DNA from: Polymyxa betae A26-41
Lineage: Eukaryota; Protista; Endomyxa: Phytomyxea
Assembly (NCBI GenBank): GCA_003693705.1
Contig: RBZT01000312.1
Coordinates: 1-64,000 of the forward strand
DNA: 64,000 nt
Direction: 5' to 3'
Positions 1 through 42,979 of this stretch are shown here, piece by piece. The first letter of the stretch is position 1. Each line of letters starts with the position of its first letter. The notes below the pieces were generated by a model. It had not been told where the DNA came from. It made no database searches and worked only from the letters and a program-made list of their open reading frames with translations. A program made the position numbers and the translations under genes.

Positions 1-2447
1 TTTAACGATAAGCGGAACTTTACAATCACCATTTACTGATTTATTACGTTATGATTTAAATAATTTAACAATTTTACAATCAGATAATCACACATCACAA
101 CAAAATTTAATAAATAATTTAACAACAAGTGCAAATGTAATTAATACAAAATTAGAAAATTACAATTCAGCAAAAATCATTAATAGGAATTTCAACAACT
201 AATCTACAAACTGAAAATCAACTCCAACAAAATCAAATTAATAGTTTAATGATTCAAGGAGTTAGCGGACAAGAGATTGATACTATATTTGGAATAAGTG
301 GGACAATTTGGGACAGCAAACTCGGCATAATGGGTATTTCTTTACCAACATTCGGGACTACAACAAATAATTTAACTAATAAATTGGAGTTATATAATTC
401 TAATATTGGAATTAGTTTTAATTCGTTAGGATCAACTCAAACTTTAAATAATCAACAATTTCAAAATTTCAAATCATTAACAGAAACAAATATTATAACT
501 CATACAAATCAAATCGCTGACCATGAAAACCGAATTGATATTTTAGAATTGGACGTTTATGATTTAAATATTACATCGGCACTTCACGAGGATAGACTTG
601 ATAATATTGATACAGAAATAATTAATCATGATTCAAGAATTACTGATTTAGAGCAATTCTGTTTTGGGGCAACTTTTGATGCTGGAATAACCGAATCAGA
701 TATTTCTTTTATTGAAAGCGTCCAAGACATATCAGATAAAGTTCAAGTAGGTTTTCAAGCATTACAAGCAGGGCAATTGGGTTATCAAGCATATCAAGCG
801 TTTAAAAATGGTGNNNNNNNNNNNNNGGTTATAATGTTTTGAATGACACGGAAAATACTACGCAAAATACGGCGATTGCTACAAATGCTGGAACTATTGC
901 TGGATTGGTTACTTGGCAAACCGCAACTGATATAGCACTTGGAATAATTAATAGTGATGTAAGTAATCTACAAACATCAGATACAAATCAAAATAATCAA
1001 CTTACTAATATAGGTGTATCAGTTAATACAAATTTAGATAATAAATTAAATTCATTTATTATAGGGACAACAACCCGTTTTAATACTATTGACAACAATA
1101 TAATAAATTTACAGACAACGGATAATTCTCTTGGAACAACAATAAATTCATTTACAAATAGAATTATTTTTAATACAATTGGAATAACATTTAAGGGTCA
1201 GACTATTAATAGTGTTTTCTTAAATGACGTTGGAATGGGAATAAGCGGAAATTTAACTAATTCTGGAAATTTACAAAGTCCTTTAACTTCATTGCTTTCT
1301 GTTTCTTCTGGAATAATTGATAATAAAGTGGGAACATTAATAGGTGTATCATTACCACAATTTTTAACGAGGAATGAAACCGTTTTACCTTCAAGTTTTA
1401 CAACATCAAGTTTAAATACATTTCAAGGAACAGATAATTATATTTTAAAAGGCGGTAGTTCTAATAATTCTTATTTACAATATCAAAATAATACATACGG
1501 AAATAATAAATGTTATACTGGATTAATTAATGGAAATTTAAGGTTATATTCACCAGTTAATATTGAATTTTATACAAATGACGGAACGCTTAACGGGACA
1601 ATTAATAGTAATACAATGACAATTAATAATCATTTAACAATTTCGGGAACATTACAAAATTATTCCATTTCAATTTTGGGAACGAGTTCATCTGTTTTTG
1701 ATAGTAAATTAGGACAACAATTAGGAATTACAAATATTAATTTAGATAATAAGAATATTTTATTAAGTGTTTCAAGTAATATTTTAGATGGGAAAATTAG
1801 CACACAAATAGGAGTATCAAATGTAAATTTAGATAATAGAATTAATTTAGTTGGAGTTTCAAGTAATATAATAGATGGAAAAGTCGGAACAAATATTGGC
1901 ATTTAAATACCGAACATTGATGCAAAATATGCTACTTTAACTGGAATTACTATTGGAAATTACTTAACAAGAAATGAGTTAATATTACCATCCACTTTTA
2001 TTAATTCTTCATTGAAATCTTTTGGCACTTCTGGAACTATTGGAAATAATCAAGTTAGAGACACAAATTTAACGATTAATACATTTCAAGTTAGTAATTA
2101 TCCTAATGATACGGCATTAGTAATTTCAAGTCAAGAAGGAAAAAATAGTAGTTATTTTGGAAATCCTTTTGATAATACTATTTATACAAGGGTTTAGGGT
2201 TTAAAACTGGATTATGATATTTTTTTATAATTAAAAAACAATTTAAAAATATAAAACTGTGTAGGTGCTGGGTGGAATTTGGATTAATCTATGAGTTGAT
2301 TAAGGATTAATCGTGGTTTTTTGAAAAGTTTTTAAAAAATATCATATTTTTAACACCGCAGACAAGGGAACCATATGATATTATCAATAAATTTACAATT
2401 ACAATAATTTTACACTATGCCGATGTTGGATTGGATTGGATTAAACT
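1..2447 (+). mobile_element. AT-rich foreign segment, probable end of an endogenous DNA virus / Polinton-like element
   Basis: Visibly much lower GC than the rest of the window, intronless, encodes an Asn/Ile/Thr-rich repetitive fibre-like protein, and switches abruptly to host-like composition near 2450. No capsid, integrase or polymerase gene is in the window. Confidence 0.55.
2..2197 (+). pseudogene. Decayed repetitive fibre/spike-like protein (trimeric coiled-coil plus beta-repeat character)
   Basis: Frame open from base 2 (LTISGTLQSPFTDLL...), frameshift near the A-run at ~172-177 into ORF 249-842 (heptads HENRIDILE/HEDRLDNID/HDSRITDLE), N gap 814-826, ORF 839-1906, in-frame TAA 1904-1906, same frame continues to 2197. 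Internal repeats: GVSSNIxDGK, FLTRNETVLPSSF/YLTRNELILPSTF, LTISGTLQ. Confidence 0.55.
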
Positions 2448-40000: not shown

Positions 40001-40294
40001 CCAGGTAATTCCGTTCAATCGTTGGCATGTTTTCATTTTGCTGAATTCAAACAAGTCTATGCAAAAGGCACAACATTGACGAAACCAGTTCTTGAAATCG
40101 AACTCGGCGGCAATAAGTCCCTCCATGTTGTTTCGATTGACCATCTTCCAACTGTTATTCCCAGGGAAAGCAGCTCTGAATTTTCCCAGGATATTTTACC
40201 TTACTTGTATCATTTATTCGAACCAGAATCCTCGCCGGTATTCAAGAAAGCCGGTTCACTCTTCTCTGAAAAGCTCTCCCAAGTTGTTGTTTAA
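37059..40294 (+). CDS. Bifunctional saccharopine dehydrogenase fusion: N-terminal Lys9-type (glutamate-forming) + C-terminal Lys1-type (lysine-forming), multi-exon
   Basis: N-half: [63 protein letters not shown]-half: [81 protein letters not shown]. No separate ATG for the C-half. Confidence 0.88.
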
Positions 40295-40423
40295 ATCGAT
40301 AAAAATCCAACTTGTTTCATGTCTCAAAACTTGCCTCCAAATTACCATCTTGTTTGTCAAAAAACTGATGCGCAAAACTCGTGTCTTGTTTCCCCAAGCC
40401 CAGCTCCTACGGTACTTCAATAA

Positions 40424-41524
40424 ATGTCGTTTCTTCGCCAAATAATCAAAGACCGGCGTGCTATAGCGCAACGTCACGAACATCAATCAGGTGGTGAAAG
40501 AAATAGGGCCGGTCGATTGTTCCCAAAACGCAAAGTCGACAAGCCATGGCCGCGACCATTTCCATTGGATCCTCGGTTGTTTTCGATGCATACTCGGCAA
40601 ATCGCTCGATGTTTGACAAATGCTGTTTCGTGTCGAGCCTGTGGAGTTACTGTTTATGCGATTGCAGGGACAGTTCCGGATCTGCTTTCAAATCCCTCAA
40701 TTGGATTTTGGACTAAGCGCGTACGAACATTTTGACTTTATCAATGACAGTGTGGTAATCAAAGCGTTCTTAGAAAGACCTGGGCAACAATGCCATCGAT
40801 CGAACCAGAGCACGTAAACGGATGAGAGAGTTGGCGGCGGCCGCTTGTGTTCAATGTGGCCTTCCTGGAGTTCAATACATTTTCCGGCTATCTGGCCCTG
40901 TATTATTCCTCAGCCCTAAAGATATGTACAGCGAAATATGTTATGTAATCAATGTGATGCCTATGATCGTCACCTAACATCTTTTCAAGGCCATGAACAC
41001 TCTTGCTGGAAAACAAATGGCAAGGCATACTGTCTCTAGGCCTCTTCCCGGTTGTTTAACTATCAACGAACTTCGAAGCAGAATCTCAGATTTCGAGTCG
41101 ATTAGTGGAAGCATGGCAGGGCAATACGCCATCAGGTTATTGCATCCATTATATTCAGTGAAGGGAGTGATGAATATATTAACACAGCCTTTATTCGGGA
41201 TCAAACTGGGATGGAAGCTGTCATTCTATTGTGAAACAATTGCAGAATTTGTGCCATCTAGCGAAATCTGACCCGATGATCAAGAAAGCACTGTCAATGA
41301 GAAGCGCAGCCGACTTTCGTGGTACACATGAGGTCAAGAAGCATTGTCAGAAATGTCAGTATCAAAGCCATCTGGTTCGATATTTCATTGGTTAGTCTGT
41401 TGTAGAGCATTGTTCGAACAGGAAGTCATTGATCGTTTCTACAGGGTATTGTTTTCCCAGAGGACATTTGCAGTTTATCCCTGATATCATTCCGATTTTG
41501 TCCAAGTTGCTTACAATCTCATAA
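40424..41524 (+). CDS. rnpA: Bacterial-type RNase P protein (RnpA)-like domain fused to an OSCP/ATP synthase delta N-terminal-like domain; 5 exons, 298 aa
   Basis: Exons 40424-40720, 40774-40944, 40990-41135, 41188-41390, 41445-41524; all GT-AG, introns 45-54 nt, frame preserved. PSIGFWTKRKDLGNNAIDRTRARKRMREL..LPGVQYIF matches the RnpA RNR helix; GQYAISLYSG...RGHLQFIPDII resembles OSCP. Confidence 0.7.
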
Positions 41525-42148
41525 ATTCCTGGCGACATAATTCGTTCTAGCAGGTTGCAGTTTCATATTGCTCATAAAGTCAGCGTATGTCATCGATAAT
41601 CGAAAGACAAGCGGCAGCTCTGTGAATAATCATATCGTTCCATGCGTCGGTGCGGCCAAAAACCTTCCTCTCACATCTTCATAACATCGTAGCTTCATAG
41701 AATCGATCGACCGTTGCAGAACGCTTAAGGCTATCTTGACGGCAACAAACGCTTTGAAACTGAATGTCCAACCTCCAGCATTTACCGAATTGGATCCAGA
41801 GCGTTTAGTGCACGACACTCTTTGACATATTTGCATGATTTAATCTCAGACCGAACTAAAACCATGATCTGCTCTTTCTATACGACATTAGACTGATTAG
41901 AGGCCTAAAAGTTCCATCTGAGAACAGCTACGGAGGTTCCTGTTCTCTGATCTATTTTTCTGAGTTTGAACGGCATTTTCTCGCGTTCATGCTAATTGAT
42001 TTTTCATGATTGTTGCCCAAGTAAGCAATATGCGATGCCATCGGACTCCATTCCTTCATCAGTTTACGATCCCGTTCTATATATTACCTGTTCTGTATAT
42101 CATCGTCGTCGTCCGTGCATTATCAATCAGCTCATCCTGCAATTCAGA

Positions 42149-42979
42149 ATGGCCTGGCAATGTTCCGCTTCGTCCAACGTCCAGCTGCTAAACAACCTTC
42201 GCCATGCCGGCATCATTAAGACCGATCGGGTCTTTCGTGCCATGATGGCCGTCGATCGCGGCGGCTACGTTCCCCGAAACGAAAACGCCTACGACGATTC
42301 CCCTCAGCCGATCGGTTGATGATCTGGTCAGTCGCTTCTAGCTTCTCACCAATCCTCGCAGGCTACAACGCAACAATAAGCGCTCCTCATATGCATGGGC
42401 AAATGCTCGAGCTTCTACAAGGGCATCTGCAGCCCGGGTCGATATCCCTGGATGTCGGCAGCGGCAGTGGTTATCTGACCGCCTGTATGGCCCAACTTGT
42501 CAAACCAGAAGGGAAGGTATTCGGTGTCGAACATATCCCTGAGCTCAACGACCAGGCCCTTCGCAACATCAAGAGAGCTAACTCGGACCTATTTGACGAC
42601 AATGTCGTCGAGCTAGTCGTAGCCGATGGCCGTCAAGGCCTGAAAGCGCACGCTCCTTATGACGCGTAAGTGAGTTTGGGGTTTTGTAGGGTTTAGGGTT
42701 TGACTGCCACAGGATTCATGTGGGCGCGGCCGCCCCTGATGTCCCACAAGAGCTCATTAAGCAATTGAAGAATGGAGGTATGGTCGTTTTAGGTTCCGCG
42801 ATGGCGGATATGACGCCTGGCTAGGGCGGCTGGTGGTTCCGGTCGGATCCAACATCTTCGGCCACGAGCTCATGGTCTTCGATAAAGATCAGAATGGACG
42901 AATCCATTCACAGTCGGTGGCGGCGGTCCGATTCGTACCGCTCACCAGCCGGGAAAGTCAACTTCGTTCCGAGCGCTGA
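42149..42979 (+). CDS. PCMT1: Protein-L-isoaspartate O-methyltransferase, 4 exons
   Basis: MAWQCS, AYDDSPQPIG|YNATISAPHMH, LDVGSGSGYLTAC, DGRQG...APYDA|IHVGAAA, VRFVPLT. Confidence 0.97.

What the first reader, a model, noticed from the sequence alone, without database searches (positions are those of the whole stretch)
41100..41524. RnpA is fused in frame to an ATP synthase OSCP/delta N-terminal-like domain
Seen: two more canonical introns (41136-41187, 41391-41444) extend the same frame to SMAGQYAISLYSGSNWDGSCHSIVKQLQNLCHLAKSDPMIKKALS...LVRYFIGYCFPRGHLQFIPDIIPILSKLLTIS*. Known: the OSCP/AtpH N-domain begins G(R/K)YAxALY/F and ends ...LLxxxGRLxxxxxIxxxFxxL over about the same length; this six-helix domain caps the F1 alpha subunits. 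The OSCP C-terminal stalk-binding domain is absent. Inference: a chimeric protein that could tether tRNA 5' processing to ATP synthase or the mitoribosome, or an OSCP paralogue co-opted as a structural domain of RNase P. I know of no described RnpA-OSCP fusion.
Basis: partly seen in the sequence, partly recalled or inferred. Interest (0 to 1): 0.82.

Follow-up and report, generated by a model that had tools for sequence, protein, structure and literature searches.

The report
RNase P protein fused to OSCP-like domain
A plant-root parasite (Polymyxa betae) makes one spliced mRNA whose protein joins a bacterial-type RNase P protein subunit to a copy of the N-terminal helical domain of ATP synthase subunit OSCP, a domain combination that I found described nowhere and that is conserved in a second genus.

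Summary
Transcript-derived contigs of two public runs remove all four predicted GT-AG introns. One 1127-nt contig spans the whole five-exon ORF (40424-41524, 298 aa), with no further splicing after the TAA stop.

The genome matches the Polymyxa betae draft (Plasmodiophorida). Spongospora subterranea has a collinear 303-aa orthologue, 41% identical end to end. It lacks the internal Met, so separate translation of the second half is unlikely.

The C-terminal ~100 aa are a very diverged OSCP/delta N-domain:
- OSCP is the only Pfam hit, but sub-threshold (E 0.1).
- Profile-profile alignment gives 79.5% probability over 95 columns, end to end. 200 shuffles and four decoys stay at noise level.
- The ESM Atlas's single-sequence model of the orthologue superposes on an OSCP cluster model at TM 0.81 over 103 residues.

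The OSCP C-domain is absent, and a normal full-length OSCP gene lies elsewhere in the genome. The N-terminal RnpA assignment is also remote (Pfam E 0.009, hhalign 80.7%, RNR-like motif).

The extra domain is as conserved as the RnpA core and has turned basic (pI 9.4-9.8, against 5.5 for the real OSCP). This favours co-option as an RNA- or holoenzyme-contacting module of mitochondrial RNase P. That function is inferred, not shown. The scan noted the RnpA half before (s1-665193).

The parts
40424..40720 (+). Exon 1 (99 codons): ATG, Arg/Lys-rich N-terminal extension (putative mitochondrial presequence) and the first strands of the RnpA-like domain
   Evidence: Searches give the reading frame. 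One search shows the X2 contig starting at 40423 and the joint 40720/40774. One search counts 12 K+R against 4 D+E in the first 40 residues.
40721..40773 (+). Intron 1, 53 nt, GT..AG
   Evidence: joint in X1 and X2 contigs.
40774..40944 (+). Exon 2 (57 codons): RnpA core with an RNR-like motif (D-R-T-R-A-R-K-R-M-R-E)
   Evidence: PF00825 E 0.0093, 16.4 bits (cut-off 22.3), profile positions 49-99 of 109; hhalign 80.7%; 54% identity to P0001.
40945..40989 (+). Intron 2, 45 nt, GT..AG, with an in-frame stop
40990..41135 (+). Exon 3: end of the RnpA-like domain, a poorly conserved linker (26% identity), and the first 7 residues of the OSCP-N-like domain (A-G-Q-Y-A-I)
41136..41187 (+). Intron 3, 52 nt, GT..AG. 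If retained, the frame would run to the TGA at 41269-41271.
   Evidence: joint 41132/41185, cut +3..
41188..41390 (+). Exon 4: main body of the OSCP-N-like domain (67 full codons)
   Evidence: 49% identity to P0001 residues 203-269, E 1.1e-14; match to OSCP profiles.
41391..41444 (+). Intron 4, 54 nt, GT..AG
   Evidence: joint 41389/41444, cut +1.
41445..41524 (+). Exon 5: last helix of the OSCP-N-like domain (R-G-x-L-x-x-I/L-P motif) and the TAA stop at 41522-41524
41525..41971 (+). 3' UTR, unspliced, at least about 230-450 nt. It holds no OSCP C-domain exon.
   Evidence: X2 contig runs to 41753 and X1 contig to 41971, without a further joint.

Best explanation
A single-copy nuclear gene of Polymyxa betae is spliced from five exons into one mRNA. 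The mRNA encodes a 298-aa basic protein with four parts: (i) an Arg/Lys-rich N-terminal extension that looks like a mitochondrial presequence; (ii) a highly diverged bacterial-type RNase P protein (RnpA) domain with an RNR-like motif; (iii) a poorly conserved linker; (iv) a ~100-aa helical bundle that is a very diverged copy of the N-terminal domain of ATP synthase subunit OSCP/delta, without the OSCP C-terminal stalk-binding domain. Shown: the splicing, the continuous ORF, conservation of the architecture in Spongospora, the similarity to OSCP-N in profile and fold, and a separate canonical OSCP gene. Inferred: the protein is imported into mitochondria and serves as the protein subunit of an RNA-based mitochondrial RNase P. 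A mitochondrial rnpB gene is annotated in the relative Plasmodiophora brassicae. Also inferred: the OSCP-derived domain has left ATP synthase duty, has become basic, and acts as an accessory module that contacts the reduced mitochondrial P RNA, the pre-tRNA, or a helical partner peptide in the holoenzyme.
For: Splicing and one contig over the whole ORF.
Frame.
Orthologue P0001 (Spongospora subterranea, 303 aa): exon 4 matches residues 203-269 at 49% identity, E 1.1e-14 against 1.84 billion proteins. The source name is given. The end-to-end alignment has 119/289 identities.
Single copy and reciprocal match in P. betae.
Conservation by region: OSCP-N-like domain 47% identity, 70% positives and no gap over 101 aa; RnpA core 49%; linker 26%.
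OSCP-N similarity:
- PF00213 is the only Pfam family reported for P0001:190-303 (E 0.1, profile positions 3-99 of 172).
- My own OSCP HMM from 115 sequences scores 14.1 and 11.5 bits at positions 2-91/99.
- hhalign gives 79.5%, E 1.5e-5, 95 columns. 200 column shuffles reach at most 19.7 against 35.0, and the reversed query scores 10.2.
- Decoys RnpA, atpF and the atpA N-terminus give at most 0.3%.
- The ESM Atlas model of P0001 (pTM 0.67), residues 193-298, superposes on an OSCP cluster model at TM 0.81 over 103 residues. The three nearest named clusters by language-model features are all PF00213.
RnpA: PF00825 E 0.0093 on exon 2; hhalign 80.7%, columns 28-104 of 109.
Canonical OSCP elsewhere: G000:C587, 120.8 bits; 202 aa.
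Charge: pI 9.4 and 9.8 for the fused domain, against 5.5 for the canonical P. betae OSCP N-domain.
mt rnpB in P. brassicae: PMC6823432 and bioRxiv 10.1101/335406.
Mitochondrial RnpA precedent in Andalucia godoyi: PMC7050145.
Against: - Both domain assignments are remote. No Pfam match reaches its gathering score, and NCBIfam finds nothing. PDB sequence searches with single sequences or two-row profiles find neither RnpA nor OSCP.
- My own AlphaFold models have pLDDT 38 and 52. Foldseek on the second gives no significant hit; OSCP/delta chains appear only at ranks 31-39 with E about 6.
- Only two species carry the protein as far as could be seen. No Plasmodiophora brassicae orthologue surfaced.
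- The mitochondrial genome is not in this assembly (no cox1), and RF00010 found nothing. The partner RNA in P. betae itself is therefore unverified.
- Localisation, RNA binding and activity are untested.
- A basic pI also occurs among some bacterial delta N-domains (range 4.3-10.4).
Confidence: 0.68

Rival explanations
1. Same fused protein, but the OSCP-N-like domain keeps the ancestral activity of clamping the N-terminal helix of F1 alpha subunits. It would tether mitochondrial tRNA 5' processing to F1 or to free alpha subunits at the inner membrane, or regulate ATP synthase assembly.
For: The two best-conserved OSCP-N motifs are kept in both species: Y-A-x-x-L-Y/F at the start, and R-G-x-L-x-x-(I/L)-P near the end. 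From my own knowledge of the E. coli delta/alpha-peptide structure, not tested here, helices 1 and 5 form the alpha-binding groove. The fold match is TM 0.81.
Against: A canonical OSCP exists and would occupy the single site on assembled F1. The domain has changed from acidic to basic. Identity to OSCP N-domains is only 15-22%. No interaction data exist.
Confidence: 0.13
2. The C-terminal ~100 aa are an unrelated small helical bundle. The likeness to OSCP-N is convergent or a chance low-level profile match.
For: All sequence scores are below curated cut-offs. The hhalign probability is below 95%. My own AlphaFold models are unconfident and Foldseek gives no significant hit. The tool output cautions that TM-scores of short helical domains mean little.
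Against: Four partly independent methods point to the same family in the same register, end to end: the Pfam scan of 24,736 families, the home-built HMM and hhalign, language-model features, and the ESMFold-model superposition. Shuffles, the reversed query and four decoy profiles all fail. Each species alone also matches.
Confidence: 0.12
3. The N-terminal half is not an RnpA homologue but another basic RNA-binding domain. On this reading the protein is not an RNase P subunit.
For: PF00825 scores only 16.4 bits on exon 2 and is not reported at all for P0001. NCBIfam and PDB searches are blank. The first ~27 profile positions of RnpA are not aligned.
Against: hhalign gives 80.7% over 76 columns, covering the RNR helix and the flanking strands. 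The RNR-like motif is conserved in both species. The decoy OSCP and atpF profiles give 0.1%. rnpB is annotated in a related mitochondrial genome. The known eukaryotic RnpA of Andalucia is described as highly diverged too.
Confidence: 0.15
4. The fusion is only apparent. The functional products would be two proteins, made by internal initiation at the Met just before the OSCP-like part (41113) or from alternative transcripts or intron-3 retention.
For: An ATG lies at 41113-41115, two codons before the OSCP-like motif. Contigs cannot show transcript starts or rare isoforms.
Against: The Met is not conserved in Spongospora, where Ile-Pro stands at that place. No stop separates the halves. The X2 contig covers both halves with intron 3 removed. 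The orthologue is recorded as one 303-aa protein.
Confidence: 0.05

Closest known systems
Bacterial RNase P protein RnpA (Pfam PF00825, COG0594) and its rare nucleus-encoded eukaryotic homologues (Andalucia godoyi mitochondrial RnpA; prasinophyte RnpA-like proteins; PMC7050145)
   Same: RNR-like basic helix and flanking strands align with bacterial RnpA. The gene is nuclear, and the N-terminus is presequence-like. The lineage has a mitochondrial rnpB annotated in P. brassicae.
   Different: The sequence is far more diverged and falls below the Pfam cut-off. At about 300 aa it is roughly 2.5 times longer than bacterial RnpA. It carries a C-terminal OSCP-N-like domain that I found described for no RnpA.
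ATP synthase subunit OSCP (mitochondria) / delta (bacteria, chloroplasts), Pfam PF00213
   Same: The N-terminal helical bundle matches in length and register, and in the start and end motifs. The fold of the ESM Atlas model matches at TM 0.81.
   Different: There is no C-terminal stalk-binding domain, and identity is only 15-22%. The domain is basic instead of acidic and sits at the C-terminus of another protein. The genome has its own normal OSCP.
Mycobacterial b-delta fusion (atpFH), the known case of a fused OSCP/delta (from my own knowledge, not tested here)
   Same: An OSCP/delta-family domain is fused to another polypeptide.
   Different: There the partner is another ATP synthase stalk subunit and the whole delta is kept. 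Here the partner is an RNA-processing protein and only the N-domain is kept.
Yeast Rpm2 and other lineage-specific mitochondrial RNase P proteins
   Same: Works like them in concept: extra protein mass accompanies a reduced mitochondrial P RNA.
   Different: Rpm2 is unrelated in sequence to RnpA and to OSCP. This comparison is an analogy only.

Membership tests
RnpA / Ribonuclease_P (PF00825) | Sequence match to the family profile at or above the curated cut-off (22.3 bits) | tested here: inconclusive
   Exon 2 alone scores 16.4 bits, E 0.0093, profile positions 49-99. P0001 shows no hit at E<=10. The joined P. betae protein could not be submitted. hhalign against 30 bacterial RnpA gives 80.7%, E 1.3e-5.
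RnpA / Ribonuclease_P (PF00825) | RNR motif (basic helix, R-N-R-x-K-R-x-x-R-E type) that contacts P RNA | tested here: met
   D-R-T-R-A-R-K-R-M-R-E in P. betae and D-R-S-R-A-R-Q-R-I-R in Spongospora, aligned on the motif.
RnpA / Ribonuclease_P (PF00825) | Alpha-beta sandwich fold of RnpA | tested here: inconclusive
   The AlphaFold model of P0001 has pLDDT 38. No usable model of the N-terminal half was obtained.
RnpA / Ribonuclease_P (PF00825) | A cognate RNase P RNA (rnpB) in the same compartment | not testable with these tools
   The assembly lacks mtDNA (no cox1), and RF00010 finds nothing in it. rnpB is annotated in P. brassicae mtDNA (PMC6823432).
RnpA / Ribonuclease_P (PF00825) | Supports pre-tRNA 5' cleavage with P RNA | not testable with these tools
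   Needs biochemical reconstitution.
OSCP / ATP synthase delta (PF00213) | Sequence match at or above the curated cut-off (22.3 bits) | tested here: not met
   P0001:190-303 scores 13.1 bits, E 0.1, as the only family listed. Exons 4 and 5 alone show no hit. The six-frame scan of the genome finds only the canonical gene.
OSCP / ATP synthase delta (PF00213) | N-terminal helical-bundle domain | tested here: met
   The ESM Atlas model of P0001, residues 193-298, superposes on an OSCP cluster model at TM 0.81 over 103 residues. hhalign gives 79.5% over profile columns 1-97, with controls. My own AlphaFold model is too unconfident to add anything.
OSCP / ATP synthase delta (PF00213) | C-terminal domain that binds the peripheral stalk (b subunit) | tested here: not met
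   The ORF stops at 41522-41524 and the transcript contig is unspliced for at least 230 nt beyond. P0001 ends at the same place. The profile match stops at position about 99 of 172. The protein is therefore not an OSCP subunit; it carries an OSCP-N-like domain.
OSCP / ATP synthase delta (PF00213) | Binds the N-termini of F1 alpha subunits | not testable with these tools
   Needs a binding assay or complex modelling.

The most novel reading that the evidence does not exclude
Plasmodiophorids rebuilt their mitochondrial RNase P by recruiting a duplicated ATP-synthase stator domain. Fused to RnpA, the OSCP-N bundle would physically couple tRNA 5' maturation to F1 alpha subunits or the inner membrane. 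Alternatively it would replace lost P RNA structure as a new RNA-binding fold. Either case would be the first example of an OSCP-derived domain working outside ATP synthase.
Probability: 0.3. Interest if true: 0.8.

Novelty: new variant of a known kind. Interest (0 to 1): 0.62.

Why it matters
Nucleus-encoded bacterial-type RnpA is rare in eukaryotes. The papers read here report it for the jakobid Andalucia and for prasinophytes. Finding it in Rhizaria, beside a mitochondrial rnpB, widens the set of lineages that kept the ancestral RNA-based mitochondrial RNase P.

The fusion partner is unexpected. As far as I know, the OSCP/delta N-domain occurs only in ATP synthase stators. A conserved, basic, free-standing copy fused to an RNA-processing protein would be a case of domain exaptation.

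It also gives a concrete, testable handle on how protein mass is added to shrinking organellar ribozymes. The alternative is a possible physical link between mitochondrial gene expression and the ATP synthase.

The organisms are crop-relevant vectors and parasites, but the finding is basic cell biology.

Tried and rejected
- Word-index protein search with exon 4: blank.
- ESM Atlas features on exon 4 alone: noise only.
- Six-frame family scans of the own genome for PF00825 missed even this gene. The PRORP scan (PF16953) had no positive control. Neither shows absence.
- RF00010 in the own genome: nothing. The assembly has no cox1, so the mitochondrial genome is simply not there.
- The look-up of encoding contigs for P0001: not on record.
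- Metagenome scans with P0001 and with exon 4: no relatives.
- PDB sequence searches with single sequences and two-row profiles: no RnpA and no OSCP.
- NCBIfam: nothing.
- AlphaFold2 with only two species: pLDDT 38 for the whole protein and 52 for the domain. Foldseek found nothing significant. I did not add OSCP sequences to the folding alignment because that would have made the test circular.
- MAFFT misplaced short exon fragments. Those alignments were not used.
- PolyA runs X9 and X12 held no reads of this organism.
- Rejected idea: a hidden OSCP C-domain exon downstream. The transcript contig is unspliced beyond the stop.
- Rejected idea: a recent duplication sharing intron positions with the canonical OSCP. 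That gene's single intron lies at a different place.

Full report
**What is in the sequence.** Between a saccharopine-pathway gene that ends at 40294 and a protein-isoaspartate methyltransferase gene that begins near 42150 lies a five-exon gene on the + strand.
- The exons are 40424-40720, 40774-40944, 40990-41135, 41188-41390 and 41445-41524.
- The introns are 53, 45, 52 and 54 nt, all GT..AG.
- Joined, they give 897 nt with one terminal stop, i.e. 298 aa.

**Transcript evidence.** The look-up of sequencing runs found four small runs of one study that hold the stretch. Their kind is not on record. Read laying shows that their contigs lack introns, so they are RNA assemblies.
- All four joints of this gene, plus one intron of the upstream gene, are present in both runs laid.
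- In X2 a single 1127-nt contig (depth 13.6) runs from 40423 to 41753 with all four introns removed.
- In X1 the contig continues unspliced to 41971.
- The ORF is therefore continuous on spliced RNA and the TAA at 41522-41524 is its end. No further exon that could encode an OSCP C-domain is spliced on.
- Limits: contigs are not single molecules and drop rare isoforms. Two polyA raw-read runs carrying the same species label held no read and are no test.

**Organism.** G000 has 1001 contigs and 27,085,814 bases. The Polymyxa betae draft is described as 1,001 contigs, 27,085,946 bp and 45.1% GC (PMC6328671). The nearest protein comes from Spongospora subterranea. I take the window to be P. betae (Plasmodiophorida, Rhizaria).

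**Conservation.** An exhaustive HMMER search of 1.84 billion representatives with exon 4 gave one real hit, P0001 (303 aa). It is 49% identical over residues 203-269, E 1.1e-14. The other three hits are repeat proteins.
- P0001 is an uncharacterized protein of S. subterranea.
- The joined P. betae model aligns with it end to end, with 119 identities in 289 aligned columns.
- By region, identity is 32% in the N-terminal extension, 49% in the RnpA-like core and 26% in the linker. The OSCP-like domain has 47% identity, 70% positives and no gap in 101 residues. The extra domain is thus held as tightly as the core.
- The Met that precedes the OSCP-like part in P. betae is Ile-Pro in Spongospora. 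This argues against independent translation.
- P0001 finds only this locus in P. betae, so the gene is single copy.

**Is the C-terminal part an OSCP N-domain?**
- *Exon-by-exon scans.* Pfam finds nothing on exons 4 and 5, and the six-frame PF00213 scan of the genome sees only the canonical gene.
- *Pfam on the orthologue.* For P0001:190-303, PF00213 is the only family reported, at E 0.1 and 13.1 bits, below the 22.3 cut-off. It spans profile positions 3-99 of 172, which is exactly the N-domain.
- *Own HMM.* I built an OSCP/delta alignment of 115 sequences: 80 alphaproteobacterial loci, 31 diverse Pseudomonadota loci, three database proteins and the P. betae OSCP. Its HMM scores the two C-terminal domains at 14.1 and 11.5 bits, at positions 2-91/99 with one single-residue insertion.
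- *Profile-profile.* hhalign gives 79.5% probability, E 1.5e-5, 95 columns, query 8-105 on template 1-97.
- *Controls.* 200 column shuffles have mean 11.6, SD 2.4 and maximum 19.7, against 35.0 for the real query. The reversed query scores 10.2. Decoy profiles of RnpA, ATP synthase b and the alpha N-terminus give at most 0.3%. Each species alone still matches in the same register.
- *Independent structure model.* The ESM Atlas holds P0001 with its own single-sequence model (pTM 0.67). Residues 193-298 superpose on a model of an all-PF00213 cluster at TM 0.81 over 103 residues. The three nearest named clusters by language-model features are all PF00213, at 0.86-0.87, which is lead level.
- *My own AlphaFold runs.* With only two species in the alignment they were unconfident (pLDDT 38 and 52). 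Foldseek on the second found nothing significant, with OSCP/delta chains only at ranks 31-39. That test is inconclusive.
- *Conclusion.* The OSCP-N reading is well supported (about 0.85). Identity to real OSCP N-domains is only 15-22%.

**Separate canonical OSCP.** G000:C587 carries a two-exon, 202-aa OSCP with both domains, scoring 120.8 and 30.1 bits. Its single intron lies at a different place from the introns in the fused domain.

**Is the N-terminal part RnpA?** Support is moderate (about 0.8).
- Exon 2 hits PF00825 at E 0.0093, 16.4 bits, below the cut-off. P0001 gives no hit.
- hhalign of the two-species N-terminal profile against 30 bacterial RnpA gives 80.7%, E 1.3e-5, template columns 28-104 of 109. 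This span includes an RNR-like motif conserved in both species.
- The decoy profiles fail.

**Context.**
- P. brassicae mtDNA is annotated with rnpB (PMC6823432; bioRxiv 10.1101/335406).
- A diverged mitochondrial RnpA is described in Andalucia godoyi, and RnpA-like proteins in prasinophytes (PMC7050145).
- The P. betae assembly lacks mtDNA (no cox1), so its own rnpB could not be checked.
- The first 40 residues are rich in Arg/Lys and poor in acidic residues in both species. This fits a presequence, but that is inference.

**Mechanism.**
- *Shown:* one mRNA, one ORF, two recognisable domains, conserved across two genera.
- *Inferred:* a mitochondrial RNase P protein subunit with an added domain.
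- The added domain has net charge +7 and +6 (pI 9.4 and 9.8). The organism's real OSCP N-domain has net charge -3 (pI 5.5), and bacterial delta N-domains have a median pI of 6.9.
- I therefore favour co-option as an RNA- or holoenzyme-contacting module, at about 0.45 of the total.
- A general helix-binding adaptor comes next, and a tether to F1 alpha subunits last, at about 0.13. The tether would have to compete with the resident OSCP.

**Novelty.** The full-text library holds no paper linking RnpA and OSCP other than one incidental co-mention. A search for OSCP N-domain paralogues or fusions gave nothing relevant. I class the finding as a new variant of a known kind: an RnpA-type organellar RNase P protein with an unprecedented accessory domain.

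- It was built only inside run_python from window coordinates. It was used there for local alignment, hmmsearch against my own HMMs, and hhalign.
- It was never typed or sent to any search, family-scan or folding tool. Those were run exon by exon or on the orthologue P0001.
- The joined-protein Pfam, PDB and structure-prediction step is therefore left out.
- The scan had already noted the RnpA half on this same window (s1-665193).

Noticed in passing
window 40203-40423: In run X1 one contig runs from the upstream saccharopine-pathway gene, across the 129-nt spacer (40295-40423), into this gene. In X2 the two are separate contigs, and the second starts at 40423, one base before the ATG. Either the UTRs overlap, or there is read-through, or the 5' UTR is extremely short.
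   Followed up: no
window 40003-40053: A 51-nt GT..AG intron of the upstream saccharopine dehydrogenase-like gene is confirmed by the same RNA contigs. That contig's depth is about 320, against 13.6 for the RnpA-OSCP contig.
   Followed up: partly
G000 (whole assembly): No cox1 match anywhere in the 1001 contigs. The mitochondrial genome seems to have been filtered out of this assembly, so organellar partners such as rnpB cannot be studied from it.
   Followed up: partly
ESM Atlas cluster met: The best structural neighbour of the fused domain is a eukaryotic (mostly Streptophyta) cluster of 149-aa proteins that all carry PF00213. These are shorter than the 202-aa OSCP found here. Plants may hold truncated OSCP-like paralogues worth a look.
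   Followed up: no
L001 (G000:C587) 1480-2206, minus strand: The canonical P. betae OSCP gene has two exons (68 + 134 codons) and one intron of about 120 nt. That is more than twice the length of the 45-54-nt introns of the RnpA-OSCP gene.
   Followed up: partly
window 1-2000: The first 2 kb of the window (the contig end) have only 27% G+C, against 42-53% elsewhere.
   Followed up: no
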